A stretch of 64,000 bases of DNA from Paragordius varius (Eukaryota; Animalia; Nematomorpha): positions 3,100,001-3,164,000 of the forward strand of contig OZ176058.1 in assembly GCA_964247055.1 (NCBI GenBank). Reading direction: 5' to 3'. How positions within the stretch are numbered: the first letter of the stretch is position 1; every line of letters begins with the position of its first letter. The notes under the pieces were generated by a model. That model did not search any database. It was not told the DNA's origin and saw nothing but the letters and a program-made list of their open reading frames with translations. Positions 36,650 through 63,375 of this stretch are shown here, piece after piece. Made by a program: the position numbers and the translations under genes.

Positions 36650-36769
36650 TTTTTTTTACAAGCCTGTTACTTTTTCATATTCGCTTTTTTTTCGCCATGC
36701 TGTTCAACTTTTGAACCACCATTGTCTATTTAAAAATTTGAATGAAAAATACAATAACGAAAATTTGAT

Positions 36770-39700
36770 ATGGCTGATATTAAAAATTATCTTTATACGT
36801 GGTGTTGTAAGAGAGGGAGTGTTTTATCTTATGAGTACAGTAATGTAGGTCTTAAATCTCCTCACTTTATTTGTCAAGTATTACAATATTTAACAAATAT
36901 AATAGGCCACTATTTCTACGATAGATTATGTAGCTCAAGGTGGAGCCAGCAGTAAAAAGGAGGCCCAGACCTTAGCCGCCAAAAATTTTGTTAAATATCT
37001 GATGGATCATAATTTTATGCCCAAAATAAATGAAGCGCCCCTTCGATCAAATTCTACCACCATAAGTTTTTTTTTTATTTTTAATTATTAATATAGAACA
37101 AGCCAATAATTTAGCGAATGGGAGGACAGAGAACATTGCTGACCAAGATATAACAAAACAAAAGCTTAATGAAGTAATTATTTTATTTGTTTTATAAAAA
37201 AGCATAATATTTTATTTTTTTAATGGATTTATCCACACCTTTTCTTAATCTTTTTTAAATGAAATATTGGGTTACATAATAGGAAATGGAGATATAATTT
37301 GTCAATAAATTAATAATCAATTTTAATGTATATAGGAAAATCAACTTTAAAAGTATATTCCTAAAATGCGCTTTAGCTTAATTTCATTTTTTATACGGGC
37401 AAAGTTTTTTTATATTTTAGTTTAATTTAACAGTTTATTTTTATATATATAGATTGATCATATTGTTTATAAGGTATATTATGGACTTTGGTTCTTTTAT
37501 TATAAGTTTTTTACAGAAGTGTATTTAGTATACAATTCACTATTGAATATCAAGCTTTTTATTTTAATATTTTTTACCGAGTTTATAATATCTATCTTTT
37601 GTGTATATTGGTGAAATCTATATATGTATAAAATGGAAAGTGATGGCTTTGTGATCTGTTTCCAAAATGGTTTACCTATTCAAATTTTAATATCGAAAAA
37701 ATATGATCATTAATAAATGTTTCCACAATAGCTTCGTCCTTTTTTTTGAATTAGGCCCCCAGTTTGGGCTTACTCCGTGTTAAAAACGGTTTTTTTTGAA
37801 AATTTTCCGGAAAACGTGTTGGACCATTCAATTTAATCTATTTTTTTTACTTATTTTTGTTTGCGCCGAACATAGTCGGCTCGCTTTTTTAATTTAGGCC
37901 CTCTTTTTACCCGCTCCTCATTGAAATTGCCCTCCTTTTCAAAAAAACTCCACAAAAATAGTTTTTGAATCTATTTTTCGCTCAAGATCTGAGACCGTAA
38001 AAATTCTAATGAGTATTCCCAATATTCTCTGTTAAAAGGCAAATTAGTCATGCGTTTTTTTATATTGGCTTTTGGGTAAGGAGATACCCGCTAAAAACTG
38101 ACCCGTCATATTGAAATAGCGTGATTTTGGGGTTAAATTTCGGAAAACCTATCAGGCCATGTTAGCTCAATAAATGCTTAATATATTACCCTTAACTAGG
38201 CAAAAAAATAATTCGAGCGTTTTTTCAAATTAGCCGTTAATTAGGCTCTGCACGCCCTTAAAAATGCGCCACCATAGAATGATTTTTTAGTTTTGAGCAA
38301 TTTTTTTAAAAGCAATGAGACCATATGGAATCAACCATGATTTTCTCCGTAAAAAGGCAAAAATTAATCAAGCGCTGTTTTTTTGTATCAGAGGGGCGCC
38401 ACCATATCAAAATTGCGTTGTTTAGGAGTTAATCAAATTATCACGCCATATAAGTTTAATGAGGGCCTGAATTAATACATGTAAAAAGGAAAAAATTTAA
38501 GTCGAGCGGTTACTTTAAATAAGACGTCAATTAGGTCCTACACGCCCTAAAAAATGCGTAATCATTGATTTAATATTTAGTTTTGAAGCCATTCTTCCAA
38601 AAACAATTCGAACATATGGAATGAATGATGATTACAGGTATTCCCCTATAAAGGCAAAAATTTTCGTCGAACGTTTTTTTATTAGCCTCTGGGCAGGGGA
38701 CTACCCGCCTACAACTGCGCCACCATATCGATACAGCGTGCCTTTGAGCTTAAATTTCAGAAAACCTATCAGGCCATATGAGTTCAATAGCTGCTTAAAA
38801 TCTTACCCGTAACAAGGCAAAAATTTATGTTGTCCGGTTTATAAAACTACTCTCTAATTAGGCTCTTGCCCTGAAAAATGTGCCACCGAATAACTTTTTA
38901 GTTTTGAGGCATTTTTTCGCAGTCGCGATTCCAGGTATTACCTGAATTAAGGCAAAAATTTTAATCGAGCGTTTTTGTTTCGCTTTTGGTTAGGGGGATA
39001 CTCGCATAAAAAGGCGTAACCATATCGATACAGCATGCCTTTAGAGCCAAATTTTAGAAAATATATGAGTAATAGAAACATATGGATTCCATGATAATTC
39101 CAGACACCCGCCAAAAACTGCGCCATTATATAGAAATCGCATTGTTTTGGAGCTAATTTACAGAAAATTTATATAGCCAGAATATAAAACTAGGTAAAAA
39201 AAGGTCAGGTGTTTTTATTTGCCGTTAACTTGGGGCTTTTATTCCCTAAAAATACGCCATCATATAACGATTATATAGTGTTGAGGTTTTTTCCGAATAA
39301 CCTATGAGAAGATGGTATCAAAGATGATTCCAAATATGTGCTCTATAAAGCAAAGAATTTAACTCAGCGCTTTTTCCATATAAGTTTTTATAAGTGTAGG
39401 GGTCTACCACTCTAAAACTGAGACCTTAAGCAGATTTTAAAAAATTTAAAAACCATACAGTTCAGTTAAATACATTTCCTGGGAATCCCTATATCATTTT
39501 TTCCTTTAAAAGGGGACCACAAATCATTTACTTTTTATAACCCTCGATCTGTGTGAACACACTCTCAAAATAAATACTTTTAAACCATGATTTCGTTAAA
39601 TGAAAATCTTAAAATGACTCCAATGATAGTTGAATTTAACTTTAATAAGAGACAGTTTAAATACGGTCAATTTTGACTAAACAATATTTGAGCCTATGCA

Positions 39701-42700
39701 AAAACCCGTAAAAGATAATTAATTTATCTCCAATACTCCTATTTATTGCAAATTATTAAGGATAATTATTGGTTAGATTACGTCACAGCGAAGCCTTATA
39801 GTTATAGTGCATTTTAAAGAAATTAATCCCATACATGGCTTTTCCAAAAACCATATATATGCATCTTGATCAAAATTCAATCATTAGCAGATTTAATTTA
39901 TCCTGGAATAGCTGTGTCACGTGTATATGTGTTCACACATAGATATATGGTTATCATGAAAGTCTGTTCTTTTTTTCAAATATGGCAGTAATAATTAATG
40001 TTTGAATATCCACAATATATAATTATTTGGATGATATATTGCCCAAAAATGTCTATCTCTGTTTTAATTCAAAACTTGGGGATAAACAACATTGTTTGTT
40101 AGTCCCTTATTGGTAAGTACAAAAAGGCTTTCAGGATTGCTACGCGTGAACACGCAACATATAATAATTGCCCGTGTGAAAAGCATTCTTTAGAAAATTG
40201 AAATGGGACTACTTATGGAATCATAGGAATGCGAGGAATAAAAACATTCTTACCTTCAAACGGTCCCACTAATATAGTAGCTTCTATTATTTTACAATCT
40301 AAAAGTTTTCAACTATGAGTCGTGTGTGCCATTGCGCAAAATCTTGGCTGATTAATATTGCGTAACACATCCACATAGATAGGTAGTTGAATCAGGAGAT
40401 GCAGTTAATTATCCAACCGAATTCTTAAATTCTTCCTATGATCCATCAGGACCACCCCATTTAATGATTCTAAAGGTAGTATTTTCAATAATATCGTTAC
40501 GCAATATCGCAATGACAATAAATAAGGCTCAGGGCCAAACTTTAAACGATTGCGGATTAGATTTATCTACAGATTACTTTTCACACAGGCAATTATTATA
40601 TGTTGCGTGTTCACGCGTAAGTAATCCTAAGAGCCTTTTTGTACTTACAAATAAGGGACTAACAAACAATGTTGTTTATCCCCAAGTTTGAATTAAAACA
40701 GAGATATTATACATTTTATATATTGAAATATGAGTTTGCTTTTTAAACTAATTTATCAACCCTGTTTACGACATATGTTTTTTTATTAACTTTCTCAGAT
40801 CAAATTGTGTAAAATCGAAAAATCTCAAGACATCATATGTATAAAAATGAAACAATATTTTAATAAAATTATACAATACAGTAGCGTATGACATAAAACA
40901 ATATTATTCCATAAAAAGAATTTTTTAAAAAAAACAAAGGGATATTATGGATGTGTATTTACATTTAGGCTTGAATGTTATATGCCATACGCTACTGTTT
41001 ATGTACGTTTGTTTCGGCCAATTGGTGTATACCATAGTCAGTGATAAAAAAAATCAAATTATGTTAATAATAAACAAAATTAATGTTGTGAGATTGGAAA
41101 ATGTTGAATAATTTTCACCATTTGTTGTTTTTATCTATATGCTACTGTGTTTCCGATCACAAATAATCTAAATTGGCCAACATTAATGTGTGCATACTGT
41201 ATCTCTATTTTTAAAATTTTTTGACCCCTGATTTACTATTTACTTTTTTGTCCTAGTTTACATTTTGGGGTAGTTTTATATCCTAAAGCTTAATTTTGTT
41301 AACTAATTACAGGTTTGATATTTTAGTCAAAATCTAATGGTCAAATATTGTCTGTGTTATAAATAAAAATGGCTTTATTTTTAACAATTTTGTGACTTTT
41401 AAAGTTTAAAGAGGAGAGCTAAAAACACGCATCTGAAATTAAAATCAGAAAACTTTAAGTTTTGTAATTTCTTGGTAAAGCTTTTTAAAGTTAAATATAT
41501 ATATTTTTTAACCATAATATACATATATTGGCCTGTGACATTACCGATTTAAAAAAAATTAAAAAAAAAATGGCGGCAAAAAAGTTTGATATGAGGATTT
41601 TTTACAATTTACATTTTTTAAATATTTTTTTCTCACCTAAAAGGTTAAATAAAGCATATTATTATATTCGATTTTATATCTTAAAATCTTTTTAAGATGT
41701 TTTAATTTCAAATCGCTCTCTGATATAAAACTACTCCAAAAGGTAATGAATGAATTCTTAAATTTTATAAATTTATCTTTTGTGTAAAAAAACCAAATGT
41801 AGTTTAATGAAATTGATCAAAGCGCTTCACTGCATGGGAATTGGAAGCTAGAAAATGCAAAAAGTCGACTTCACCATTTTTTGCAAATCAATCGTTTGAG
41901 TTCGGAATATCGGTACAAAGTTATTGGGACCACACCGCAAACCAAGTTTGATTTTATGCTTATTTTTAACAATTATTAATAACCAACAACTCTCTATACA
42001 GTGGATTCAATTAAAGAATATTTGTAGTAAAGAAATTGATATTAGGGGTTAAATGAATATTAATTAAAATAAAAAAATGAATATTAGTGAAAATAAAAAA
42101 ATTAATATTAGGGGTAAAAAAATGAATATAGTCAAAATAAAAAAACATAGGGCTATGGTGCACGAGTAAGCATTACCCCATAAATACCCATTAAATAATA
42201 ATTATTTTTTAATATTAGTGAAAGAAAAAAAAAGGGAATTTATTGAGTATGTATTCTTTCCTTTTATTATAGTAAATAGTAAAAAATAATTATTATTTAA
42301 TAGGTATGGGGTAATGCTTAAACCATGGCCCTTTGTTTTTTGTTTTTTTATTTTCACTAATATACATTTTTTTTACTCCTAATATATACCATTTACAGTT
42401 CAAATTCACCCTTCTTGAACAATTCAAATTCACCCTAAAAATAAATTATGTGTTTTCGAACTAATATAACTAATTATTAATATGAAATATATCTTTATGG
42501 CATAGTTTATTATTTTTTCAGTGTTATTTTAATTTAAAACAAAATTTTTATTTTTTAAAAATATATTAAAATATAGGTAAATTTTGATCTCAAAAAACAT
42601 ATATTTTTATTGAGGGTGAATTTGAATTGTTTAAGGGTGATTTTAATTGTTTAAGGGTGAATATGAATTGTAAATGGTATATAAATTTCTTTACTGCAAA

Positions 42701-45700
42701 TATTCTTTTATTTAATTTACTTAGTCTTATGCGGCCCTCTAAAATTTTTAAAGGTTTCCGAAAATTTAGAAAAAAGCTAATAATTACAACATTTGTAAAA
42801 CTTGGAATTTTTATTATTTCCTTTAATTTGTTTGTTAATAATAATTTATAGAGAATTATATTTATTTATTTTGTTTAAATAATCACACAAATAAACTGTT
42901 TGACAAAGGATATTTTAAGGCTGTTAAATATTGTTTAATTGGACTTTGTATAATCTAGTATAATGAAAGTATTCTTAACAATAAATTTTCATTCATTAAA
43001 TTTTTTATAGACAAAGGATTCAAATTTTTGATTGAAGTTAAACTTTTGGAAATAAATCATGTATTTATCAATATTTTTTTTCGTTAAATGGGTATAAATA
43101 TTTGGTAAAGAATGGAAAAAACAAGAGCTCTCTGGTGTAATTTTTATACTTTTATTGATGAATATGATATTGTTAATACCATAGAACTCTTGTTTTTTCC
43201 ACATTCTTTACCAAATATTTATACCACCCCCCATTTAACGAAAAAAAATAAATTTTTGATAAAATAAATACATGATTGTATTTTAGGAATTTTAAATGTC
43301 ATTACCAGGCCATTTGTTGATACCCTTATTCTAAACTAATGATTTAATATATTGTAATAACATACATTAAATAAAAAACTTTATTTTTTTGAAATCATTT
43401 TTAAGTTAATTACCTACATATTCCAAAAATTGGGAATCCACTAACCTGAAATACGCATAAAGATTCTAACCTTATCACTTAAATAAATTTTTAAAACATT
43501 TTCTTATACGCTTTCCCAATATTTTTACCCTTGAACAAATCAAATTCACCCTAAAATAGTTATGTGTTTTCGGGATAATATAGCTCATTATTGATATGAA
43601 ATATATTTTTTTCGACATATTTTATTATTTTTTCATCATTATGTTAATTTTAAACAGAATTTCATATTTAAAATATATTATAAAAAAAAGTAATCTTAAA
43701 AAACACGTTAGTATCAAGTAATTGATTTTAGGGTAAATTTGAATTGTGTAAGGGTGATTTTGAACTGTAAATGGTATTTCTTATAAGCACAACAAACACT
43801 AATACATAATCTTAAATATTTTTTTTCATATGACAAGGTAGGCTAAAATTACCGTTTTGCCTGTATAATTTATTTTTTACTCTATATACGAATCTATTAT
43901 AAACCGAAAAACGAAATTTATTACATAAATTCTAATCTTACTGTAAAACAGAGCATACTCACATAATAAGTTTTGTCCGTGTAATTTAAATTTGTATATG
44001 AGAATGCCTACAACTAAATAATCGTACGTATTAATACAAAGTTTAAAACGAAATTTATTACATGAACTTAAACTTAATCTTACTGTAAAACAGAGCATAC
44101 TCACATAATAAGTTTTGTCTGTATAATTCCAATATTCAGTGTATATGTTAATCCTTACAACTAAATAATCATACTTATTAATACAAAGTTTAAAACTAAT
44201 CTTTGTCTTAATATACCTTTTAGGGCATACATTGCTGAGATGAGTTTTCACGTCGTTAATAAAGATGACAATCCTATCATGATTAGCGCATCCGAGTATG
44301 GAAAAACTAAAATTGCAGCCTCAAAAGCGTGTGCCCTTATGCTTTTGCGACAATTATTTCATTTGGGTCTGGTTGAATCTTATGATCCGACTCAAAAACT
44401 ACTTGGAACAACTGCTGGGAGTAAAAAAAAGAAATTTGGGAAAAAAAGAGGAAAAGATGGAGGATTTAGTAGAGACACCCCAAAGCGTATTAAACCAGAA
44501 ACAGTATCTAAGTGGATTGTAAGTTTTTTTTAAAATTATTTGAAGTATAAAATCTATAGATACTTTTTTTAAGCAAAAATTTAAAACTTTTATTGTTTAT
44601 AGATAACATATAAAAATTATCTTTGGGATTCTTGTCTTTACACAAAATATTTAATTGTAAGTGTTAGAGTTTTGCCTTGAATGATAAATCATACAAATAT
44701 TTTTATAGTAAATATTTAAGGCGCGGGTAGGGAAAATGATCATTTAAATTTATAATTTCTGTAAAAAATATACAGTAAAAGGTTTTAGAGTGATTTTTTA
44801 GTTTTAGAACTTAAAATAAAGGATTGATTTTTAAATTACATGTTTTATTTATTTTTTTTCTTGCAAATAAAATTTTATTTCGAGATTTGGTTTGATTTTT
44901 CTGTTTTATTAAACATCCAAAGAAACTGAAATTAAATTGTAGCTTGTAATTTTTGCTTTAACTTTTAAATTATAAGGCAATTTTTTACATTTAAAAAAAT
45001 ATATAAGCTTTATAAATAAGACGGATTTTATAACTTTACTTACTCTATATTTTTATATTAAATGACACATTTTTAATTTTTTTTTTGAAAAAACAGATTA
45101 TTAAATTTATATTTTGAATTTTTTAAGATGGACCCCCCTTGCAATGTTAATTTGAATCCTGAAATCAATGTTCAATTTGACGAAGCTTTGAAAATGCTAC
45201 AACTTATACCTTTAGACATTGTAAAAAAATTTATTTTACTAAAATATTTTATTTATATAAATTATTTTTAAAAGATTATATTAATAGATAAATAAAAATT
45301 TGTTTGATTTTTATATTAATTTAATTAATTTCATTACAAATGCGAAAATATGTTATGAAATTTAATTAAAATTGCCAATTGTTTTTGTTTTTTAAATTTT
45401 CAATTATACCATATATTTTTTTATTAGATAATTAAATTGTTAGAATATTGTATCAAAATTTTAGCATTTTTTATAAAATTATTTTTTTGAGCCATTTTAT
45501 AACAATGTTTATAAAATTTAACTGTACATTTTTTTCGTTTTAAATCAGGGATTTCGGGCCGCATTCTAACTATAAATAAAATTTAAATAAAATTTGCTAG
45601 ATTTCAAACATAAAAATGTAAAATGCAAACGCAATATAGCAATTTTTTCTAGCTTATTGTCAATAGGATATATTAATTTACAAAAATTGTTCATGAATTT

Positions 45701-51700: not shown

Positions 51701-54700
51701 AATATGAAATATATCTTTATGGCATAGTTTATTATTTTGTCAGTAATTTTTTATAAACAAAATTTCATCTTTTAAAAATATAAAAATTTTTAATTTTAAA
51801 AACATTTAATTTATTTAAGGGTGAATTTGAAGCGTAAATGGTATATTAATTTATATTGAAAAGTTGTTTTGTTCCTATAAAAAAATGACTTCTTTTTTTT
51901 ACTTTTTGTTTTAAATATTTTATAATATTATTTTTAAATTTCGTGTTAATTAAAAAAATTAAAATAATTCAATTTTATACATTTTACGTTTTTGTGTCTG
52001 TATGATATCTGATTTTTTACAATTTTTATACTAAGAATTATTTTAAATAATATACCTTTTTTCCATAATTTTTTTTATAATTTTATTCTTACTCTAAAGC
52101 TTTGTTTATATAATTTTGCTGCTTTTTAGACCGAATTTACATATTTTTTATAGTTTTCCAATTTAAAATTTTTTAATTTTTTTTGACATTGTTAGACCGA
52201 ATTTATATTGATGCTTTTACGTGATTGCGTTCAAGTTTATAATCCACACTTTAAACTCATTATTCTGAGTTCTGATTCTTGCATATCCGACATTGAAGAT
52301 TATTTTGTTAATCAAGACAGAAAAATTATTGATATTTTCTCAAAAAAAGATCACTCTATTAATTCAATTGTTTCTCTTGATGGTACAAGCGAAGATATTG
52401 ATGAAGATATAAATGAAAAAACGGATTTTATTGGTTTAAAAAGTAAGTCTTACTTAAAAAACGAATTTTTAAAGGTGTTTTGGATATAATATTATTTTTA
52501 ATTATGAAAAAACTGAAACCATTGATTTTAAAAGTAAGTTTTACTTAAAAAACGAATTATAAAGGTATTTTAGATATAATATTATTTTTAATTATGAAAA
52601 AACTGATTCCATTGATATAAAAACTAAGTTTTACTTAAAAAACGAATTTTTAAAGGTGTTTTTTAGATTTAATATTTTAACTAATTTCAAGTATTTATAT
52701 AGAGTAAAAACTGAAATTACACGGACAAAAAGTAAAAATATAAAGACAGATATTATTTTATTTCAAAAGACAATTATACTTTTTTAAACATTAATTTTTC
52801 TCATACAAATTATAAAATTACGATTGTAATATATATATATATATATATATACATATATATCAATTCCACACTTTTAATGAGTTAAATTAAAAAAAGCAAG
52901 ATTTAAAAAGTATGGGGTTATCTTTTAGAAAAATATTTGTCTTTATATCTGCACATTTTGTCCGTATAATCACAGTTTTTATCGTTAATTTTAATATTTT
53001 TTCAAAAGATTTTTTTATAATAATCGATCGCCCAAGCGGATCCGAAATATATAATATTATTTTTAATTTTTTATATTATTCGCATATTAGTCAAAATAAA
53101 ATATTCATATATTTTATTAAAATGATTATATTGTCATAAAGTATATACTATAATTTTATACTTTTTATCTTGCTTAGTTTTTTAAAAAAAAAGTTTTAAA
53201 CATTTTTTTCTTTTAGAATAACTAACTAATAAACAAAATATTTTGAAAACTATTTTATTCCTTTATTTTTTATAATCTATATGCTTACAATTGTGAAATG
53301 GATAATAAATTACTTTTAATGTTTTGTAAACATATTAAGGTTAAAAAGTATGGTTTTCTATATCAAGTAAAAATATATGTACCATTAATCAAAATTATTC
53401 ACCCACGAACAATTTAATTTTACCCTAAAATTGTAGTTTTTAAAAATCAAAAAATTAACATGTATTTTAGATATTTTTATTGAAATGAAACTTTGTTTTA
53501 AATTAACTTAATATCGAGAAAAAAAATGAATAATATCTGCCACAAATATATTTTACATTAATAATGAGTTTATTAGCTCGACAAAAAATAACTTATATAT
53601 TTTAGGGTAAATGAATTTGAAAAGTATTTTATAGTTGAAAAACACATAACTCATATTTTAGGGTGACTGAATTTGAACAGTATTTAATAGTTAATTTGAG
53701 GTCTGGAGTTTATAGTATAATAAATTGTCATAATTTAACTTATTTTTCTAAAGAATTATTTTTTATTAATAATAGAAACAACCGGGGAAACATTATTTTT
53801 GGATGATTGTATAGAGTTAACGCATTTCGATTACAATGGAATTGTTGGAACCGCTTACGGTAGAATGCGAAGACGCAAAAAAGCCAAACTTAGAAGGAAT
53901 TTACCTCCTAGTTTACATAATTTGAATTATACTGGTATTTATTTTTGATATTTAGATTTTAAATTCAGAAAATTTATTAAAATTTAACAAAAATTATTAT
54001 TGAATGAAATGAAACTTAAAACTAAATACAGTCATGTATCCTTTATTATATCAAAAATTTAGGTATAATAATTTCAGAAATTATATAGTAACAATCAGTT
54101 TTTTACAAATCAATAATTAAAATTGTAAATTTTCCAATCAAATGCAACAACATACACATTCTTAAATTGATTCATATAGCCTTAAAAAATCATTTTCTAA
54201 AGCAGCTATTTTAAAGAAATAAAAATGTTAATATTTCTTTGATAACTTTTTTAAAAAAACGACCCCATTTCTATGCTCTATAGTACAAACATTTTTTTTT
54301 TTTAGGTTTTCATATCTCATTCAAAATTATTGGTTAAATTGATTTCTCATTTAAAATACAATCATGTATCCTTTATTTTATCAAAAATTTATTTTTATTT
54401 TTATTTTTCGTTAAATGGGCCTATAAATATTTGGTAAAGAATGGAAAAAAACAAGAGCTCTATATAGTAATTCTTTTAATTTTATTAATGAATATGATAT
54501 GGTTAATACCATAGAGCTCTTGTTTTTTTCCATTCTTTACTAGATATTTATACTCCCATTTAACGAAAAAAATATATTTTAAATAAAATAAAGGATACAT
54601 GACTTTAATTTAAATGAGAAAACTTAATTAATAATTTTAAATGAGAAATAAAAACTAAAAAAAACATATTTGCTTTTATAAAGCATAAAAATGGGGTGGT

Positions 54701-57700
54701 TTTTAAAAAAAGTTATCAAAGAATTTGTCAAAAATTTTATCCGCACATGTTTCTTTAAAATAGCTGCTTTAGAAAATAATTTTTTATAATGCAATATAAA
54801 TCAATTTAAGATTAAATGTGTATGTTGTTGCATTCGATTGAAGCATTTACAATGTTAATATATAGAATTGTAATAAACTGATTTTTACTATATATAATAT
54901 TCTGAAATTATTTTACCTAAATTTTTGATAAAATAAAGGATACATGACTGTAATTTAAATGAGAAATGAAACTTGACTAATATGAAAAATGAAAAAAAAT
55001 GTTTGTACTATATATGAAAATTTGTTTGTTTTTTAAAAAAGTTATCAAAGAAACTTTTAACTTTTTATATTTCTTTTTAAGAGCTGCTCTAGAAAATAAT
55101 TTTTTATAATGCAATATGAATCAATATAAGATTGAATGTGTGTGTTGTTGCATTTGATTGAAAAATTTACAAAATTAAATATAATTTTAGTATTGTAAAA
55201 AACTGATTTTTTACCCTATATAATATTTTGAAATTATTATATCTAATTATTTTCAGTGGATCCTGATGAAACTAAAGCTCCCTTCTGTGATTTTTCTATT
55301 GTTGGAGAACAAGAACTAGAAAATCAAAAACGAGGACATTCAAAGATTTATAAACCTTTGACACGTTACGTTTGTTCTCAAATGTCGCTAAAGAATGACA
55401 TTTCTTTCGAATTGATTTATGTAAGAACAAACCTTTTTATAATAAAATCATTGGGTAAAAAAAAGTTTGTGGTTTTTTTTGAAAAAAAACCGCTTTTAGA
55501 AACTAAAAACTTGAACATTATAATAATTTTATAATTTCCTGATTATTTTTAATTATACATATATATACCATTTATAGTCAAATTCATTCTTGACCAATTT
55601 GAATTCACCCTAAAAAACAATTATCTGTTTTCGAATTAATATAAAATATATTTTTATGGCATAGTTTATTATCTTGTCGGTATTATTTTAATTTTAAACA
55701 AAATTTTATCTTTTAAAAATATATTGAAATAAAGGTAATTTATAATTATAAATAACACTTAATTTTTTTAGGGTGAATTGAATTATAAATAGTATATATA
55801 TTGTTTACAAGAAATTTATTAGATTTCAAATATAAAACTGTAAAATGCAAATTCAATATAGCAATTTTTTCTGGTTCTTAACAAAATTGATAGACTTATA
55901 TAAAATACCTATTTAGGAAATATTACTTTTATTTAGATTTTGTGAGCATTTTTTATAAAATATGAATTTTCAAATTTTTCGCGGGCCGCACATAAGCTGC
56001 TTGTTGGTGACTCTTGATTTAAGTAAAAACCTTAACTTTTTAATACGGTTCTTTTTTATACAACGTTTATTCATTTTTAAAATATTTTTTATAACATAAT
56101 ATTATTTATAGAGTGTTTAATAATGGTGATTCATTAAAAACGTAAAGCTTGTATTGTTTTTTATACTTCTCTATATATAATTCTTTATTTAAATAACTTA
56201 AAAAAATTGAATTACGGACAAAACCTAAAAATATAAAGACAATAATCTTATCTAAAAGACAACCATACTTTCTAAAACCTTAATTTTTCCCATATAAGCT
56301 ATTTATTTACAATTGATTGTGTTAGTAATATATATCACTATTTTACAATTTTCCGTTTAAAACAATGAGTTATTTTGAAAAAAATCAAGATATAAAAAGT
56401 AATGGTTTTCGTTTAGAAAATATATTTGTCTTTATATTTTACGTTTTGTTAGTATAATTTTAGTTTTTACTGTAATCAGTATAAAATCTTAAGCAAAAAT
56501 TGGGTATTTTTATCAAAATATATTTTTAGATAAAAAATATGAAAAGTGGGGCGGGAAATTTTAAATGGTCAACTAATGGTGAAATTAAAATTTGATTTAT
56601 TTTTATTTTTAAAATGTCCTACTTAAAATATGTAAAAAAATATTTTTAAATTTTTTTATTCATTTAATTGAATTCCGTGACTTTTATACTTTTTTAAATT
56701 TTTGCCAAATATTTTTCCTGTAATAGGTAATAGGCTTTACCAATATATTTATAATACGGTAAAAATCATTAAAATTATACAAACAAAACGTAAAAAAACT
56801 AAAAGACTACTTTTTCCATAAGTGTGATATACCCTTAATTTAGCTGAAATTTAAAAAAATATTTATTAACTTTTGTCCTTACATTTAAATTTTTTGATAA
56901 ATTTAAAAAGAAATTATACGGACAAAACTTTATAATTAAAAGAATAAAATTTTTTTCTAAAAGCCAACCATAATATATAAAAATTAAAGTTTTTAATGAT
57001 ATAATTTATTGTTTCAAATTGTAAAGTATGAATATTAATGTACCATTTGCTATTCAAAAGTGTCCTTGATCACTTTAAGTAGTTGGTCATTTAACTCTTA
57101 TGTTTTCTTTTTATATTTTAACTCGTAATTAAAAAGTAAATAAGTTTTATGGGTTACTATTAACAATGTTTCATTGGAAACATTTAAAAGTTAATAATTT
57201 TGCTAAATTGGGAAAAAATTAATAAACAAAAAAGTTGTTTTTGAATATGAATAAATAATTATTAAAAAGATAAAATTAGGTTTTTAAAAATTAAAAAAAA
57301 TGCAAAAATTTATGGTTAAATCAAAATTTATAATATTTTAAGCACCAACTTGAAATCAAGGCATTCTTAAAATGTTCAAAGACAAACTTGAAATGCTAAT
57401 GGTATAACACAAACCTAAAATAAAATATGGTCTTTTGGAAAAAAAATATTTGCCTTTATATTTTTACCTTTTGTGTCTGTAACTTAATTTATTTTACAAT
57501 TTTTAGAGCATTATAGATTATATAGTGAGTAGCAAGGAATATGGGACCATACTTATATTTTTACCTAATGTCACTTATATTCAGTCATTAGAAAAATATT
57601 TGTTGGATATAATTGGTAGAATGTCAAGTAAATATCTATATCTTTCATTTTGCTTTTTTTAGACAGAGAATTTTATATATAATTCTCAAGAAATTAGTAA

Positions 57701-60700
57701 AAAAAAACTCAATATTCCACAAAATTTTTAACATCATAAATAGAAATACAGTCGAACTTTTTTTGTGCGAAAAAAATCGCGACAAAGTTTATTATAACTG
57801 TTTTTTGACTAATTCACATTCATTAGATTTAATTTTAAAATATTTTAAATATAAATTTACAAGTATTCAATTATAATATAATTTGGACAGAAAATGCGTG
57901 TTTTTTTTAAAAAAGTTTTGACTGTATTTATGCTGTTAAAATTTTAGGTGTTTTCACATTTTTTAAGTTAACTTATATTTTTATGCCAAAAAAGCAAATT
58001 GATTGATTATGTTTATACTTTTCATTCCAAAATCCAAATCCCAAGTTTTTTTAACAAAAAAAGTTTTTTTTTAAAAAAAATGATTTTAATTTTAACCTAC
58101 GATTATTAATTACTTTTTAAATTTTAATTATATACTATTTATGAGATCGGTTTTTAACAATTTACATGTAATAAAAAATTTATTTATACTTTTAATTCCG
58201 GAATCCAAATCCCAAATTTTTCGAAAACATAAACACGTTTTTTCTAAAAAATGATTTTAATTTAGGATTATTAATTTACTTTTCATATTATAATTATATC
58301 CTAAATATTTATAATATCGGTTTTTAACGATTTGAAAAAATATATTTATACTTGTAATTTCAAAATCCATATCCCAGAGTGTTTTAAAACATAAATTTTT
58401 TTTAAAAAAATGATTTTAATTTTAACCTATTACGATTATTAAATACTTTTCATATTATAAATATATCCTAAATATTTATGATATCGGTTTTTAACATAAG
58501 TGTTAAAAATTATTTATACTTGTAATTTCAGAATCCATATCCCAGTTTTTTAACATAAAACTTATTTATAAAAAAATGATTTTAATTTACGATTAATTAT
58601 TACTTTATATATTATAAATATATCCTAAGTATTTATGATATCGGTTTTTAACTCTAGGAATATAATAAAAAATCTATTTATAATTTTCATTCCAGAATCC
58701 ATATTCAAATTTTACTTTCTTTTAATTCATTTATACGCTATTTAATAACCTAAGATTTAATTAATTTAAAAAAATATCTCAACAAATTTTATTTCCATAA
58801 TTAATAACTTTAACCTTAAAATATTAACAAAATGTTGTTTAAATATCTTTCTTTAACAAAAATCATGAAATATATTTGAAGAAAATAGTAGCAATAATGT
58901 TATTGAAAGCGAAAATGATGGAAATAATGAAGATAGCAAAATCACTACGGAATCAATCAATAATGAGAATGGAAATGCAAATAGAAAAAAAAGAAATTTT
59001 ACTTTTTATAAACTTCATGAATGGACCCCTTTTGCTGATTGGGAAAAAATGTCATCTACTAATCAAAACGACGACACTCCGGATAAATCACAAAAGGTAT
59101 TTTAAATGCAGATTTTCCAATCCGATTTACAGTAAAACTTTTTATTTTTATTGAGATAAGTCCTACCTCTTTATTTTTCAAATTACTTATTCTGATTTTA
59201 TGTTTTAATAAAAATGTACCTTTTAAGCGCTTTTTTGAAATTATACTTTTAATAAATGCAATAATTAATTTAAAAATTTAAGAATAAGTAATTTACATGC
59301 TAAAAATATGTATTTCTTAAATTTTTAACCAGTCAAAAATAGGTGTTGAGTTTTAGTTTGAAAAAAAACTCATTTTTAATTAAAAAAAGTGCTTATTTAT
59401 TTTATTTTTTACGTTTGACAAAAATCTAAATATTATAATAAATTTATATAATTTTAGTTGAATTATAATTGCATATTTATAATGGAATTAATCAACATTT
59501 TTTCCACATATTTATTATAGATTATCTTAGCAACAAGTATTGGTGAAAGATTAACATTGTGTGACGACAATCCATTGTACATTATAAACACTTGTAAGGT
59601 GGAAAAGGGCGGCATTTATGTGACAAAAAGCGACAATACAACAATCAAAAACAACAAACTCATTGTCATAACTTCAAAATCTAATGTGGATTTAAGGTCG
59701 ACCTTATTGAACTCGTCAAGCAAAGGAGGTGGCTCTTGTTTTAATCTTATATCTCGGGAATGTTATGAAAGGTATTGGTATTTTTTTATGGTTTCAGTTC
59801 CCTGAAAAACTTAAAAATACGGATGAAATAACATAAAGAAATATCTTTTTTTTATCACTTACTCATGGTTTTAAAGTGTTAAATATGAGATTGTTAACAA
59901 AATACTAGATACATTTTGCAATCGTAATTAAATTAATAATTTAATCAAGGAATGATATATATATCTTTTACCTTAAAAAACCTAATTATATATACAGAAA
60001 AATTGAATTTATACGGGGAAAATGTAAAAATATAAGCATTTTTTTTAAAAAAGACAATGATACTTTTTTAATCCTTAATTTATCCTATAAAAAAAATTTA
60101 CATTTTTATATTATACTTTGTAGGTTACAACAATGAGTTATATTATATTTAAAAAATCAAGATCATAGAAGTATGTTTGACTTTTATGTTAAAAAAAATA
60201 TTTGTCTTTATATTTTCACGTTTTGTCCCCGTATAATTTCAAAATTTACTGTAATTTATAGATTACCGAATTATACAATTTATCCGACCAACAACCTTCC
60301 ACGCATACTCCTTATAGCTCTAATTTTAGCTCAAACTCAAAACGCAAAAATTGAATTGCAATATCAGTAAGTTTATATATATACATAGTTGCATGAAATT
60401 TTAGTTTTTTTCGTATAAAATTATACGAATTAAAATTGATTGTTCGATAGAGGCAAAATAAATTTTAGATTAATAATATTCATACATTTATGAAAACGGT
60501 TTTTATGCCTATAAATTTGTATACGGTATATAATTTCCTCATGGCATTAAAAAGGGGAAAAAATAACTTTAGATCAATAATATTCATACATTTATGCTAT
60601 TGATAGGAAATTACTTAGACCCGATTTATACCAACTCAAAACGAGCTTAAGTTTTCTCTTACAAATGGGAGCTTTTGAGTTTATTGGTCTTAATAATCTG

Positions 60701-62237
60701 AATGTGAATACCACTTCCATAGATCAATTATTTGCAAATAACATCAAAGTAAGTGCGTTAGGTCGAATCCTGGCTTATTTGCCAGACATGGGCGATCTTA
60801 AAATGGGCAAAATGATTATTGCATCCTCTATTTTTGGGTATATATATAGTAATTTTGTTTAAAAACTTTAATATATTATATATGCAATTATAATTTAGCT
60901 AAAATATAATTAAAATTATATTAGGATTAAATGAAGTTAAAACTAAAAAAACACTTTTTTGGTCTTTTAAGATAACTATATACATGAATTTTTATTGTAA
61001 TGACATAACATATTTTTATATATATATATATATATAACATAAATTTAGTTCAAAAACTTAAAATTATATTAGAGAAAAAACGAAGTAAAAACTAAAAGAA
61101 CACTTTTTTGGTCTTACAATAATCAACCATATACATAATTTTGATTGCAATGACATAACATATTTTTTGGGATATATATATATATATATATATATAGATT
61201 ATTTTAGTTTAAACACATGGAAACTACATTAGAGATAAAACAAAGTAAAAACTTAAAGAACCCTTTTTTGATCTTTTTAGATAACTATATACATAAATTT
61301 GTTATAATGACATGATATATTTTTTTGGTTTCAGATCATTATATTTTTTAATTTTGATTGATTAACTATATCAAATATTCCTATATAAATATATATATAT
61401 ATATATTTATAAAGTCTGCAAATTTTGCATTGTTTCAAAATAAGTTGATAAAATAAAATATTGAGACGCTGTAAAAATTTAGAATCGTTTTTTAGATTTA
61501 CCTTTTTCCTGTTTCAATTTTATTATAAAGTCTTTATTGGTATTTTCTTAATTTTCAAGAATGTATAAAAAGTAAATTAAATGATGTCGTTATTTGTCAA
61601 ATTAAGTTTAATTTTTTAAAAAAAACAAAAAAAATCTTCTGCTAAAAAAATTATACATAAAATTTCAATAAATTGTTTTTAGTTTTACGTTTTATCCTTG
61701 GTATATTTCCAATTTTTATTGTAATATAATATTAAATTTTTGTTTTTAATGAATTTTATCATAATTTTAATTTATATATGTATTTTATTATTTATCCTTG
61801 GTATAATAACTTTTATTATATATGCAATTATAATTCAGATTAAATTATATAAATTTATTATGATATTTTGATTACTAAAAGTAATCATTGTCAAACGTAA
61901 AAAATAAAATTAAAATATAAACTAATTTTTTTTACTTCAGCATAAACAATATCCAATAGTAAATTTTATTATGTTATAGAATACTAAATTTTTATTGATA
62001 AAAATTTCAAATTTTATAAGTATTTTACAATTATAAACTTTTTTTTATTTAATTTAGCGTTAGCCATTTAATGACAACCCTTGTTAGCTTACACGTGAAT
62101 CCTGACATTTTTGACAATGCCATCGTGATTAGAAAAACACTTTTGCGACACCTTAAAACTATTTGTGTCACCAATAATCGAAACAGTGATTTATTGGCTA
62201 TATTGATTTACAACAATCAATATATTTTATCTCTAGG
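36770..62237 (+). CDS. DHX9: DHX9/Maleless (RNA helicase A)-family protein, 3'-partial, with degenerate helicase motifs (candidate pseudo-helicase); >=1096 aa, >=22 exons
   Basis: Exons 36770-36877, 36906-37065, 37097-37173, 41803-41945, 44224-44518, 45128-45220, 46309-46411, 47047-47111, 47503-47577, 48390-48509, 49665-49904, 50614-50677, 51354-51439, 52196-52442, 53776-53934, 55257-55420, 57507-57615, 58882-59096, 59521-59771, 60262-60366, 60607-60837, 62058-62237; all phases compatible, no internal stop. dsRBD1 MADIKNYLYTWCCKR...SSKKEAQTLAAKNFVKYL; linker SASLHGNWKLENAKSRL; dsRBD2 ...ACALMLLRQLFHLGLVESY; MTAD-like WTPPMKDWNTW; ILPRPFGS; FLDDCIELTHF; HA2 SALGRILAYLP and NRNSDLLAIL. These are DHX9-type rather than DHX36/YTHDC2-type. 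Orthologue versus paralogue is unresolved. Confidence 0.9.
38000..39430. repeat. Degenerate GC-richer satellite: alternating ~130-165-bp A/B subunits forming ~300-bp dimers (DHX9-like intron 3)
   Basis: Anchor AAGGCAAAAATT recurs at ~38035, 38198, 38353, 38485, 38651, 38815, 38950, 39197, 39348. A subunits carry CGCCACCATATCG...GAAAACCTATCAGGCCAT; B subunits carry AATTAGGCTC...CCCTAAAAAATGCG...TTTTAGTTTTGAG. Confidence 0.75.
40383..40691 (+). mobile_element. Helitron Rep/Hel Pif1-like helicase C-terminal relic, internally deleted
   Basis: Open frame VVESGDAVNYPTEFLNSSYDPSGPPHLMILKV...IISLRN|IAMTINKAQGQTL...FSHRQLLYVACSRV...TNNVVYPQV matches Helitron helicase motifs (DAVNYPTEFLNSL..SGLPPH, AMTINKSQGQ, FSHGQLYVACSRV). 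The segment between LRN and AMTINK is missing. Confidence 0.85.
41240..41761. mobile_element. MITE family D
   Basis: TTTTGGGGTAGTTTTATATCC ... GATATAAAACTACTCCAAAAGG; reverse-orientation relative of 10735-11245. Confidence 0.55.
42111..42379. mobile_element. Palindromic MITE, PIF/Harbinger-like
   Basis: TTA|GGGGTAAAAAAATG ... CATTTTTTTTACTCC|TAA; internal arms TAAGCATTACCCCATA / TATGGGGTAATGCTTA also pair. Confidence 0.55.
42389..42677. mobile_element. MITE family A
   Basis: tata|CCATTTACAGTTCAAATTCACCCT ... GTAAATGG|tata. Confidence 0.8.
43056..43277. mobile_element. Short hairpin copy of the foldback element at 54029-54950
   Basis: AATCATGTAT...CGTTAAATGG...GGTAAAGAATGGAAAAAACAAGAG / CTCTTGTTTTTTCC...CTTTACC...CCATTTAACG...ATACATGATT; same central hairpin as 54360-54605. 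Confidence 0.75.
43909..44195. repeat. Tandem duplication, two ~140-bp units, just upstream of DHX9-like exon 5
   Basis: aaaacgaaatttattaca...cttactgtaaaacagagcatactcacataataagttttgtc...acaactaaataatc...attaatacaaagttt occurs twice. Confidence 0.85.
48950..49125. mobile_element. hAT (Buster/Charlie-type) MITE
   Basis: CAGGGGTGTTCAACAC ... TTGAACACCCCTTA flanked by the near-identical 8-mers TTCTAGAC and CTCTAGAC (nnnTAnnn target). The same left end recurs at ~21392. Confidence 0.75.
49971..50242. mobile_element. MITE family A'
   Basis: tata|CCATTTGCAAGAGTG ... (TTGGTCCTTGAACA) repeats ... CTCTTGAAGTGCAAATGG|tata. Confidence 0.8.
51594..51841. mobile_element. MITE family A
   Basis: tata|CCATTTACAATTCAAATTCACCCTTG ... 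GTAAATGG|tata. Confidence 0.8.
52411..52680 (+). repeat. Three ~90-bp tandem units spanning the end of DHX9-like exon 14 and its donor site
   Basis: atgaaaaaac(g/t)g...att(g/t)...aaaa(g/c)taagt(c/t)ttacttaaaaaacgaatt...aaaggt...atataatattatttttaatt starts at 52413, 52504 and 52594. Confidence 0.85.
54029..54950. mobile_element. Foldback-type element, ~920-bp near-palindrome with TA|CAGT termini
   Basis: TA|CAGTCATGTATCCTTTATT ... AATAAAGGATACATGACTG|TA. Each arm holds a ~330-bp unit plus a repeat of the terminal motif; a further partial unit runs 54951-55245. Confidence 0.8.
56200..56472. mobile_element. MITE family B
   Basis: TTGAATTACGGACAAAACC ... TTTTAGTTTTTACTG|TA. Confidence 0.75.
58012..58710. 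repeat. Tandem repeat, ~165-bp unit, 4+ copies (DHX9-like intron 17)
   Basis: tttatactt...aatcca(a/t)atccc...aaaaaatgattttaattt...cgattatt...atcggtttttaac recurs at ~58012, 58183, 58345, 58513, 58678. Confidence 0.85.
59995..60251. mobile_element. MITE family B ending 10 nt before the exon 20 acceptor
   Basis: TA|CAGAAAAATTGAATTTATACGG ... CCGTATAATTTCAAAATTTACTG|TA. Confidence 0.75.
60915..61325. repeat. Tandem repeat, ~155-bp unit x3, with embedded (TA)n
   Basis: aagtaaaaact...aacacttttttggtctt...aac(t/c)atatacat...aatgacataacatattttt recurs three times; the unit resembles a decayed family B TIR. Confidence 0.75.
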
Positions 62238-62264
62238 GTATTAAATTTCTTTTTTGATATTCAA

Positions 62265-62628
62265 CCATTTACAATTCAAATTCACCCTTGAACAATTCGA
62301 ATTCACCCTTGAACAATTGAAATTCACCCTTGAACAATTATTCACCCTAAAACAATTTAAATTTACCCTTAAACAATTCAAATTCACCCTTGAACAATAT
62401 AAGTTCACCTTAAAAATAAATTATGTGTTTTCGGGCAGCTAATTTAATTTAACATTAATATAAAATATATTCTTATAGCATAATTTATTATTTTTTCAGT
62501 ATTATTTTGATTTTAAAAAAAATTCATTTCATAAAATATAAAAAATATCGGTAATTGCTAATTTTAAAGATCACATAATTTATTTTAGGGTGAATTTGAA
62601 TTGTTCAAGGCTCAATTTGAACTGTAAA
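62265..62628. mobile_element. MITE family A with ~6 21-bp repeats on the left arm
   Basis: CCATTTACAATTCAAATTCACCCTTG(AACAATT..AATTCACCCTTG)n; right end degenerate; explains the spurious ORF 62254-62442. Confidence 0.75.
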
Positions 62629-63375
62629 TCGTGTAATTCCAATTATTTATAAGCCATTTTTTTCAATCAAAATTAATTATCTTTTTTCAAAAAATGTTTT
62701 TTTATCTATGAGGTTTAGTAATAATTTAAAACTATTAACCATGAATTGTAAGTTTGATTGAAAAAAAAATTAAAAATTATTTGAACTGATTTCCTTTTAT
62801 ATAAAAAAACTTGTCTAATTTTCTATGCCTTTTATGGTAATTAATTAGAATTAGCCTGACTATCTTAATTATTTTTTATTGTGAATAAAAAAACGCTTTT
62901 ATATGAAATTTGTCCAAAAAATTATTTAGTGTTATATCTTTTTACAGTATAGAATTGATTTAAGCGCTTGATTTATTTGTTTTTTGGACCCGTATTTTTT
63001 TAAATATTAACCATTTACAATTCAAATTCACCCTAAAATAAATTATGAAATTCGATACAACTCATGATTAAAATTAAATAAATTTTAATGGCAAAGTTTA
63101 TTATTTTTACAGTATCTTAATTACATACAAAATTTCTTTTTTAAAAATATAAAAAAATATAGGTAATATTTAATCAAAAACACATAATTTATTTTAGGGG
63201 GAATTTGAATCGTTTGAAGGTGAATTTGAATTGTTTAAGGGGGAATTTGAACTGCAGTGTCATAAAAATTGAAAATTTAAAGCGACAAAAGGTAAAAACA
63301 TAAAGACCAATATTTGTTACAAAAATCCGTAATACTTTTTTAATTATTTCATTGTTTTAAATTAGAAAATATGTA

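What the first reader, a model, noticed from the sequence alone, without database searches (positions are those of the whole stretch)
36770..62237. Intact DHX9/Maleless-family gene whose helicase engine is dismantled: candidate dsRNA-binding pseudo-helicase
Seen: 22 exons splice into an uninterrupted >=1096-aa frame over 25 kb, with well-conserved dsRBD1, linker, dsRBD2, MTAD-like and HA2 segments. The catalytic motifs are changed. Motif I is GPPKIGKS (family GATGCGKT), Ia QPRRISA is unrecognisable, II is DEVY (DEIH), III is SSD (SAT), IV is FLPN (FLPG), V is TSIGERL (TNIAETS) and VI is LRSTLLNS (QRKGRAGR). Established: the motif II His, motif III and motif VI Gln/Arg residues couple NTP hydrolysis to unwinding in DEAH/RHA helicases. 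Drosophila Bgcn is a precedent for a dead DExH protein used as an RNA-regulatory scaffold, but it belongs to the YTHDC2 group and lacks dsRBDs. Inference: a selected, non-catalytic DHX9 that clamps or senses dsRNA, plausibly the abundant MITE hairpin RNA of this genome, or acts as an adaptor or dominant-negative partner. I know of no described dead DHX9, but could not search.
Basis: partly seen in the sequence, partly recalled or inferred. Interest (0 to 1): 0.9.

Follow-up and report, generated by a model that had tools for sequence, protein, structure and literature searches.

The report
Fast-evolving DHX9 copy without catalytic motifs
A horsehair-worm genome carries a second copy of the RNA helicase DHX9/Maleless that keeps an open 22-exon reading frame, both double-stranded-RNA-binding domains and the helicase fold but has lost most residues needed to burn ATP and unwind RNA, so it is probably a non-enzymatic RNA-binding relative of DHX9, though whether it is expressed is unproven.

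Summary
I rebuilt a 22-exon, 3,302-nt, 1,100-codon frame (36770-62237, + strand) with no stop and GT-AG at all 21 introns. It runs on past the window.

- **Family and origin.** The best reference is a Gordionus (Nematomorpha) DHX9-like protein, P0003. The window gene is its sister (SH-aLRT 99) on a branch about 5 times longer.
- **What is kept.** Profiles of canonical DHX9 match every domain (28-82 bits per matched stretch; shuffles 3 or less). Core hydrophobic positions stay hydrophobic in 90% (RecA1) and 70% (RecA2) of columns.
- **What is lost.** Only 40-47% of invariant RecA residues survive. The motif II His, motif III, most of motif V and both motif VI arginine fingers are gone.
Walker A (GPPKIGKS) and the Walker B Asp-Glu are intact, so nucleotide binding may persist. 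HA2 is eroded, not well conserved.
- **Not a long-dead pseudogene.** Simulated neutral change of 2% per site leaves the frame open in under 1% of runs. No canonical-motif exon exists in any frame.
- **Untested.** Transcription, orthologues, dN/dS, structure and dsRNA clamping.

Verdict: a probable DHX9-type pseudo-helicase, a new variant of a known kind, of moderate interest. The same scan flagged the other DHX9-like gene of this genome as a pseudo-helicase, along with several other candidate pseudo-enzyme paralogues.

The parts
36770..36877 (+). Exon 1: start codon and first half of dsRBD1 (aa 1-36). An in-frame stop lies just upstream, at 36755-36757.
36906..37065 (+). Exon 2: second half of dsRBD1 with SKKEAQ (region 3). 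It follows a 28-nt intron.
   Evidence: (Pfam dsrm, 20 bits)
37097..37173 (+). Exon 3: linker. It follows a 31-nt intron and is needed to keep the frame between exons 2 and 4.
41803..41945 (+). Exon 4: first half of dsRBD2 (HGNWKLENAKSRL).
44224..44518 (+). Exon 5: second half of dsRBD2 plus a Lys-rich linker. An alternative donor lies at 44503.
   Evidence: (33 bits to human DHX9 and fly MLE chains)
45128..45220 (+). Exon 6: linker.
46309..46411 (+). Exon 7: linker. An alternative donor lies at 46372.
47047..47111 (+). Exon 8: MTAD-like Trp motif DWNTW (canonical NWNPW).
47503..47577 (+). Exon 9: segment before RecA1.
48390..48509 (+). Exon 10: motif I GPPKIGKS. The P-loop pattern is kept.
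49665..49904 (+). Exon 11: motifs Ia and Ib degenerate, with an 8-residue insert in Ia. GC is 0.45.
50614..50677 (+). Exon 12: LPRPFGS block and start of motif Ic.
51354..51439 (+). Exon 13: motif II IDEVYERD. Asp-Glu are kept and His is replaced by Tyr.
52196..52442 (+). Exon 14: motif III SSD. The GRxxPV element is lost. The donor is uncertain (52369, 52382 or 52442). The last candidate lies in the first copy of a 90-nt tandem repeat.
53776..53934 (+). Exon 15: LFLDDCIELTHF block plus an insert shared with P0003. Alternative ends exist.
55257..55420 (+). Exon 16: start of RecA2 (NDISFELI).
57507..57627 (+). Exon 17: motif IV LIFLPN (canonical FLPG).
58882..59096 (+). Exon 18: N/E/S-rich insert and a degenerate LHSxxP..Q..VF block. 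The acceptor is uncertain.
59521..59771 (+). Exon 19: motif V TSIGERL and motif VI LRSTLLNS. Both arginine fingers are lost.
60262..60366 (+). Exon 20: end of RecA2. The PE..R.PL.E element is degenerate.
60607..60837 (+). Exon 21: HA2 (LGRILAYLP...GKMIIASSIFG).
62058..62237 (+). Exon 22: HA2 continued (NRNSDLLAIL matches canonical NRFSDHVALL). The frame is still open at the donor and the gene continues beyond the window.
   Evidence: scan note s1-316141

Best explanation
**What it is.** This is a lineage-specific duplicate of the DHX9/Maleless gene in a gordiid horsehair worm (Nematomorpha). It has been kept as a translated gene while selection on catalysis was released.

**What it keeps.**
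- Both N-terminal dsRBDs, the Trp-rich MTAD-like motif, and the hydrophobic cores of RecA1, RecA2 and HA2.
- A P-loop and the Walker B Asp-Glu.

**What it has lost.**
- The DEIH histidine and the SAT motif.
- The RNA-backbone contacts of motifs Ia, Ib, IV and V.
- Both arginine fingers of motif VI.

**Most likely mode of action (inferred).** It is an RNA-binding pseudo-helicase. It may still bind a nucleotide but cannot couple hydrolysis to translocation. It would then act as a static binder or scaffold on structured RNA, or as a partner or competitor of the more canonical paralogue.

**Shown:** gene structure, homology, motif states, faster evolution, and past selection for an open frame.
**Inferred:** loss of ATPase and unwinding activity, RNA binding, expression.
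For: - **Open frame.** 22 exons, 1,100 codons, no stop, all introns GT-AG. The other two frames hold 63 and 125 stops.
- **Neutral decay excluded for any long period.** P(no stop) is 0.10 at 1% and 0.008 at 2% substitutions per site.
- **Composition.** Exon GC is 0.347 and intron GC 0.211. GC1, GC2 and GC3 are 0.41, 0.34 and 0.29.
- **Tree.** Sister to Gordionus XP_065312800.1 (P0003) with SH-aLRT 99. End branch 6.69 against 1.36, with a median of 0.44.
- **Shared derived features with P0003.** The FD[YF][ND]G insert, EY in motif Ic, PRPFGS, and TKI..ASKACAL.
- **Profile matches from canonical DHX9s.** dsRBD1 65 bits, dsRBD2 82, RecA1 66+51, RecA2 32+28, HA2 34. Shuffles score 3 or less.
- **Fold retention.** Always-hydrophobic columns stay hydrophobic in 90% of RecA1 and 70% of RecA2, against 34% expected from composition (p 1e-19 and 5e-9).
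- **Functional residues lost.** Invariant polar, Gly and Pro columns are kept in only 51% and 38%, against 77% and 71% in P0003.
- **Relative rates.** 2.5-5 times more unique changes than P0003 in RecA1 and RecA2 (p 1e-5 to 1e-9). About 2 times more in the dsRBDs.
- **No alternative exons.** No canonical motif in any of the six frames.
- **Polymorphism hint.** Three differences between a contig of run X1 and exon 13 are all synonymous.
- **Transcription hint.** Runs X9 and X10 hold 25-30% of exon-19 words, yet were not holders of a 4.2-kb, mostly intronic stretch. That pattern fits RNA libraries.
Against: - No read evidence of transcription or splicing. RNA runs X4 and X6 are tiny and show nothing.
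- No protein from this locus is in the protein collections.
- No orthologue was found in another species, so there is no dN/dS estimate.
- The 3' third of the gene lies outside the window and was not seen.
- The acceleration also touches the dsRBDs.
- dsRBD2 lacks the region-2 His and one region-3 Lys (PMC6451107).
- Very recent loss of function, under about 1% neutral change, cannot be excluded.
- The three synonymous differences are a very small sample and may come from another copy, since that contig's depth is about twice single-copy.
- The branch length of 6.69 is saturated and imprecise.
Confidence: 0.6

Rival explanations
1. It is a young or dying pseudogene. The duplicate lost function, is no longer expressed or needed, and its frame simply has not been hit yet. 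Alternatively only a short dsRBD-only product matters and the helicase exons are relics.
For: - No transcript evidence.
- Not in any protein collection.
- Very long branch.
- Catalytic motifs are erased and low-complexity inserts are present.
- Introns are swollen by transposons, against a compact paralogue (scan notes).
- RecA2 and HA2 are heavily eroded.
- Glossina proteins P0001 and P0013 show that MLE-type dsRBD2 repeats can exist without a helicase.
Against: - 1,100 codons are open across 22 exons, and every splice site is canonical.
- The simulation allows less than about 1-2% neutral change, while the protein differs from its paralogue at 64% of aligned sites.
- Hydrophobic cores are retained far above chance.
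- GC3 exceeds intron GC.
Confidence: 0.2
2. It is still an active, very divergent ATPase or helicase. Other residues take over the roles of the lost arginine fingers and the motif II His.
For: - Walker A fits GxxxxGK[ST]. The GPP start resembles the AAA+ Walker A GPPGTGKT (own knowledge).
- Walker B Asp-Glu, Q420/Q423, ERD after motif II, and T713, I715 and E717 of motif V are kept.
Against: - Both motif VI arginines, the Gln of motif VI, the motif II His, motif III and most RNA-contact motifs are replaced together.
- In DEAH/RHA helicases these residues are needed for hydrolysis and for coupling it to unwinding (established knowledge of Prp2, Prp22 and Prp43 mutants, not tested here).
Confidence: 0.1
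3. The gene model is wrong. The real mRNA uses other exons, or the blocks belong to more than one transcript.
For: Six junctions have more than one in-frame choice. Copies of splice sites lie beside exons 11 and 14.
Against: - The blocks are colinear with P0003 over about 950 of its residues, with one hit per block.
- Unique, consensus-like sites join most exons.
- No canonical motif is found in any frame.
- All alternatives keep the same motif-bearing cores.
Confidence: 0.07

Closest known systems
DHX9 (RNA helicase A) / Drosophila Maleless, canonical
   Same: The domain order is dsRBD1, linker, dsRBD2, Trp motif, RecA1, RecA2, HA2. It sits inside the DHX9 clade. The dsRBD2 exon matches solved human DHX9 and fly MLE chains.
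   Different: Motifs Ia, Ib, III, IV, V and VI and the motif II His are replaced. RecA1 and RecA2 carry inserts. The branch is about 15 times the family median. The C-terminal OB fold and tail were not seen.
Gordionus sp. m RMFG-2023 'ATP-dependent RNA helicase A-like' (XP_065312800.1, P0003)
   Same: It is the sister sequence, 36% identical over 855 columns. It shares lineage-specific inserts and substitutions.
   Different: P0003 keeps GCGKT, DEIH, TNIAETS and most invariant residues (78% and 69%), and has a 570-residue tail. It deviates itself at motif Ia (TEPRR), motif III (SGS) and motif VI (QRMDSAGR).
Drosophila Bgcn
   Same: A DExH-family protein with degenerate ATP-binding and helicase motifs that serves as an RNA-regulatory partner.
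   Different: It belongs to the YTHDC2 group and has no dsRBDs. It is unrelated by descent within the RHA group.
MUT-15 (C. elegans) and Utp25 (yeast), DEAD-box-like pseudohelicases
   Same: The helicase folds are kept as scaffolds without ATPase activity. MUT-15 still binds RNA (bioRxiv 10.64898/2026.09.04.749402; PMC9539457).
   Different: They are DEAD-box, not DEAH/RHA. They have no dsRBDs. MUT-15's ATP-binding motifs are degenerate, whereas here Walker A and Walker B Asp-Glu persist.
Brr2 C-terminal helicase cassette; ADAR3 and ADAD1 (own knowledge)
   Same: Brr2's cassette is a nucleotide-binding but inactive helicase module that acts as a regulatory platform. ADAR3 and ADAD1 are dead-enzyme paralogues that keep their dsRBDs and bind or compete for dsRNA.
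   Different: These are different families and are analogies of mechanism only.
Glossina DRBM proteins (UniRef A0A1A9Z0E1 and A0A1A9VZU2; P0001, P0013)
   Same: Best hits of the dsRBD2 exon (68.5 bits). They consist of repeats resembling MLE dsRBD2 (three matched stretches in P0001, two in P0013).
   Different: They have no helicase part at all and come from an unrelated lineage.

Membership tests
DHX9/MLE subfamily of DEAH/RHA helicases | Two N-terminal dsRBDs | tested here: met
   Profiles built from canonical DHX9s score 65 bits (dsRBD1) and 82 bits (dsRBD2), with shuffles at 3 or less. PDB matches to DHX9 and MLE dsRBD2.
DHX9/MLE subfamily of DEAH/RHA helicases | Trp-rich MTAD-like motif (NWNPW) before the core | tested here: met
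   DWNTW at 47064-47096.
DHX9/MLE subfamily of DEAH/RHA helicases | RecA1 and RecA2 homologous to the family core | tested here: met
   RecA1 scores 66+51 bits and RecA2 32+28 bits. Hydrophobic columns are retained in 90% and 70%.
DHX9/MLE subfamily of DEAH/RHA helicases | Catalytic motifs: I GxxGxGKT, II DEIH, III SAT, V TNIAETS, VI QRxGRAGR | tested here: not met
   Motif I fits only the general P-loop. II is DEVY, III is SSD, V is TSIGERL, VI is LRSTLLNS.
DHX9/MLE subfamily of DEAH/RHA helicases | HA2 and OB-fold C-terminal module, and a Gly-rich tail | tested here: inconclusive
   The first part of HA2 is present at 34 bits. The rest lies beyond the window.
DHX9/MLE subfamily of DEAH/RHA helicases | Placement inside the DHX9 clade | tested here: met
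   Sister to the Gordionus DHX9-like protein with SH-aLRT 99, inside Ecdysozoa. Long-branch artefact is possible, but shared inserts agree.
Pseudo-enzyme (pseudo-helicase) | Intact, selected coding frame with catalytic residues replaced | tested here: met
   Shown only for the 1,100 codons inside the window.
Pseudo-enzyme (pseudo-helicase) | Expressed protein | tested here: inconclusive
   No reads in RNA runs X4 and X6.
Pseudo-enzyme (pseudo-helicase) | No ATPase or unwinding activity | not testable with these tools
   Needs purified protein.
Pseudogene | Stops, frameshifts or broken splice sites | tested here: not met
   None in 22 exons and 21 introns.

The most novel reading that the evidence does not exclude
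The protein is a nucleotide-bound but non-hydrolysing DHX9 paralogue. It sits as a static clamp on the long hairpins that thousands of MITE copies place in the introns of this genome. There it either shields them or opposes the unwinding paralogue. This would be a dead-enzyme regulator of repeat-derived dsRNA, comparable to ADAR3 opposing the active ADARs. A further possibility is that this animal has no fully canonical DHX9 at all, since the other copy also lacks one motif VI arginine.
Probability: 0.12. Interest if true: 0.75.

Novelty: new variant of a known kind. Interest (0 to 1): 0.5.

Why it matters
DHX9/MLE is a well-studied helicase in which the dsRBDs and the motor work together. A natural copy that keeps the dsRBDs, the fold and perhaps nucleotide binding, but not the motor, would separate binding from unwinding. 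It would add a DEAH/RHA-type example with dsRBDs to the few known pseudo-helicases, which in the literature searched here are DEAD-box-like (MUT-15, Utp25) or bacterial (PriA).

The genome is 64% repeats, mostly DNA transposons, if the window belongs to Gordionus montsenyensis or a close relative (10.1101/2023.06.26.546503). The link to repeat-derived dsRNA is therefore a testable idea.

The value is limited for now. There is no evidence of expression, no orthologue and no biochemistry. The same scan flags many similar candidate pseudo-enzyme paralogues in this fast-evolving genome.

Tried and rejected
- **Single exons against PDB and Pfam.** Only the dsRBD exons score. The helicase exons are too short and divergent alone. 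Whole-domain profiles were needed.
- **An extra exon at 61531-61605.** I had inserted it between exons 21 and 22. I rejected it because its GC is 0.19 and the alignment shows exon 22 follows exon 21 directly.
- **Search for the window's own protein or an orthologue.**
  - An exhaustive HMMER search with the dsRBD2 exon gave only canonical DHX9 fragments, P0003 and Glossina proteins.
  - Two word-index searches with P0003 and one with exon 19 gave nothing from this locus.
  - The look-up of P0003's contig failed.
- **dN/dS from 'organism B' (run X3).** Its contigs are identical to the window at low depth, so there is no divergence to use.
- **RNA runs X4 and X6.** No reads on the locus.
- **Further exons in 62238-64000.** None found.
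- **Copies of splice-junction contexts** with up to 6 mismatches. None beyond those already seen.
- **The search of earlier findings by sequence.** Blank.
- **Structure prediction and fold search.** Not run.
Full report
**Material.** The window is very AT-rich, with GC of 0.18-0.33 per 2 kb. Open stretches on the + strand between 36.7 and 62.3 kb read like pieces of DHX9/Maleless.

**Finding a reference.** Single exons gave little. Only the second half of dsRBD2 (44225-44503) matched solved human DHX9 and fly MLE chains, at 33 bits. The motif Ia, motif V-VI and HA2 exons matched nothing. Pfam recognised only a weak dsrm in exon 2.

An exhaustive HMMER search with the dsRBD2 exon returned 33 proteins. 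One was full length: P0003, 1,608 aa. It is XP_065312800.1, 'ATP-dependent RNA helicase A-like', from the horsehair worm Gordionus sp. m RMFG-2023. Scan notes say this genome holds another DHX9-like gene with a tail of about 570 residues rich in Q, N, Y and G. That is P0003's architecture. The window therefore comes from this species or a close relative, and P0003 stands for the other paralogue.

**Gene model.** tblastn and local alignments to P0003 gave one colinear hit per block. Listing all frame-compatible GT/AG pairs gave a unique or near-unique junction at most steps.
- I first inserted an exon at 61531-61605. The multiple alignment showed that 62058-62237 is the direct continuation of exon 21, with NRNSDLLAIL against canonical NRFSDHVALL. 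The inserted exon also has a GC of 0.19, so I dropped it.
- The final model has 22 exons, 3,302 nt and 1,100 codons with no stop. All 21 introns are GT-AG.
- Two introns at the 5' end are tiny, 28 and 31 nt. This fits a scan note on 21-27-nt introns elsewhere in the genome.
- Six junctions have in-frame alternatives.
- The frame is still open at 62237. No further exon is detectable up to 64000. A scan note places more of 'the helicase' 5.4 kb beyond the window.

**Motifs.** Window sequence against canonical:

| Motif | Window | Canonical |
|---|---|---|
| I | GPPKIGKS | GATGCGKT |
| Ia | VSGQSVPPLLARDLTA | TQPRRISA |
| Ib | GFQNFW plus a 20-residue insert | GYSVRF |
| II | DEVY | DEIH |
| III | SSD | SAT |
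| IV | FLPN | FLPG |
| V | TSIGERL | TNIAETS |
| VI | DLRSTLLNSSS | EQRKGRAGR |

However, GPPKIGKS still fits GxxxxGK[ST]. The Walker B Asp-Glu, the TQ.PQ element and the ERD after motif II are also kept. Nucleotide binding may therefore survive, while the arginine fingers needed for hydrolysis are gone.

No canonical motif occurs in any of the six frames of the window. Alternative 'good' exons are thus excluded.

**Homology and fold.** Profiles built only from canonical DHX9s match every domain of the spliced protein: dsRBD1 65 bits, dsRBD2 82, RecA1 66+51, RecA2 32+28, HA2 34. The best of 200 shuffles scores 3 or less.

Columns nearly invariant in 25 canonical sequences are kept as follows:

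| Domain | Window gene | P0003 |
|---|---|---|
| dsRBD1 | 83% | 92% |
| dsRBD2 | 76% | 88% |
| RecA1 | 47% | 78% |
| RecA2 | 40% | 69% |

Columns that are always hydrophobic stay hydrophobic in 90% of RecA1 and 70% of RecA2. Composition alone predicts 34%. Invariant polar, Gly and Pro columns fare much worse. This is the pattern of a fold that is kept while active-site constraint is lost.

**Evolution.** In a maximum-likelihood tree of 28 DHX9s, the window gene is sister to P0003 with SH-aLRT 99. Its end branch is 6.69, against 1.36 for P0003 and a median of 0.44. The value is saturated and the position could be helped by long-branch attraction. Shared inserts and substitutions support the pairing.

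Relative-rate counts with five outgroups show 2.5-5 times more unique changes than P0003 in RecA1 and RecA2 (p 1e-5 to 1e-9). In the dsRBDs the excess is about twofold. The acceleration is therefore general, but strongest in the motor.

**Gene or pseudogene?**
- Mutating the spliced sequence with the intron base spectrum leaves it free of stops in 10% of runs at 1% change per site. At 2% the figure is 0.8%, and at 5% it is zero. The protein differs from its paralogue at 64% of aligned sites. Nearly all of that divergence must have arisen under selection for an open frame.
- Exon GC is 0.347 and intron GC 0.211. GC falls from 0.41 to 0.34 to 0.29 across codon positions.
- A contig of run X1 differs from exon 13 at three places, all synonymous. 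This is suggestive only.

**Transcription.** Direct evidence is lacking. RNA runs X4 and X6 are tiny and empty. 'Organism B' (X3) proved identical to the window, so no dN/dS was possible.

Runs X9 and X10 come from a different sample of the genome study. They hold 25-30% of exon-19 words, yet were not holders of a 4.2-kb, mostly intronic stretch. That pattern is expected of RNA libraries.

No protein from this locus and no orthologue was found.

**RNA-binding domains.** MLE binds RNA through an NKKxxxK motif in each dsRBD and through the region-2 residue His196 in dsRBD2 (PMC6451107).
- dsRBD1 reads SKKEAQT.
- dsRBD2 reads TKIAASK, the same as P0003, so one Lys is replaced by Ile in both paralogues.
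- The region-2 His is replaced only in the window gene.

dsRNA binding is likely but may be weakened.

**Context.** Introns hold very abundant MITEs.
- Word depth in X1 reaches 1.5-2.8 million, against about 180 for single-copy sequence.
- The copy at 49960-50260 folds into a long hairpin of -104 kcal/mol, z = -12.

This shows that hairpin RNA is plentiful. It does not link hairpins to this protein.

**Literature.** I found no dead DHX9. Pseudo-helicases are a known kind: MUT-15, Utp25 and Deinococcus PriA.

**Verdict.** The most likely reading is a DHX9-derived pseudo-helicase kept by selection (0.6). A recent relic (0.2), a still-active divergent enzyme (0.1) and a wrong model (0.07) remain as rivals. 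It is a new variant of a known kind, of moderate interest, resting so far on sequence alone.

Noticed in passing
window 49443-49475 versus 49663-49695: A copy of the 3' splice site and first 8 codons of exon 11 (IPQYIIEQ, with one synonymous change) lies 220 nt upstream in intron 10. If spliced in up to the GT at 49570, it would add 125 nt and shift the frame, so it may be a decoy or poison exon. A scan note describes a similar 'ladder' further down the gene.
   Followed up: partly
window 52413-52676: There are 2.9 tandem copies of a 90-nt unit at 86% identity. Its consensus unit contains the AAA|GTAAGT sequence of the candidate donor of exon 14 at 52442, which lies in the first copy. I did not check whether the later copies keep that site.
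   Followed up: partly
window 49975-50242 and 51586-51849: Hairpin-forming MITEs lie in introns 11 and 13. The first has arms of 42-68 nt and an RNA fold of -104 kcal/mol, z = -12. Word depth in run X1 is roughly 8,000 and 15,000 times single-copy depth.
   Followed up: partly
window 38000-40700, especially 40383-40688 (+): A GC-richer insertion in intron 3 carries a degenerate PIF1/Helitron-type helicase C-terminus (Pfam Herpes_Helicase 26 bits, UvrD_C_2 19 bits, both below cut-off).
   Followed up: partly
window 36878-36905 and 37066-37096: Two very short introns (28 and 31 nt) sit at the 5' end of a gene whose other introns are 240-4,629 nt.
   Followed up: partly
window 51385, 51394, 51409 (exon 13) and 51444, 51470, 51473 (intron 13): Contigs of run X1 differ from the window here. 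The three exonic differences are all third-position and synonymous. The exonic contig has about twice single-copy depth, so it may come from a second copy or a collapsed haplotype.
   Followed up: partly
P0003 (Gordionus XP_065312800.1), not in the window: The more canonical paralogue itself deviates at motif Ia (TEPRR), Ib (GYTTPF), Ic (TTEY), III (SGS) and VI (QRMDSAGR, with one arginine finger lost). This lineage may have no fully canonical DHX9.
   Followed up: partly
P0001 and P0013 (Glossina pallidipes and G. brevipalpis DRBM proteins): These tsetse proteins of about 400 aa consist of repeats resembling MLE dsRBD2 (three matched stretches in P0001, two in P0013) and have no helicase. They were the best hits of the window's dsRBD2 exon.
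   Followed up: no
P0004 and P0019: Two proteins have DHX9-like dsRBDs at the N-terminus. By eye their C-terminal halves look like a DZF/ILF3-type domain, but I did not check this.
   Followed up: no
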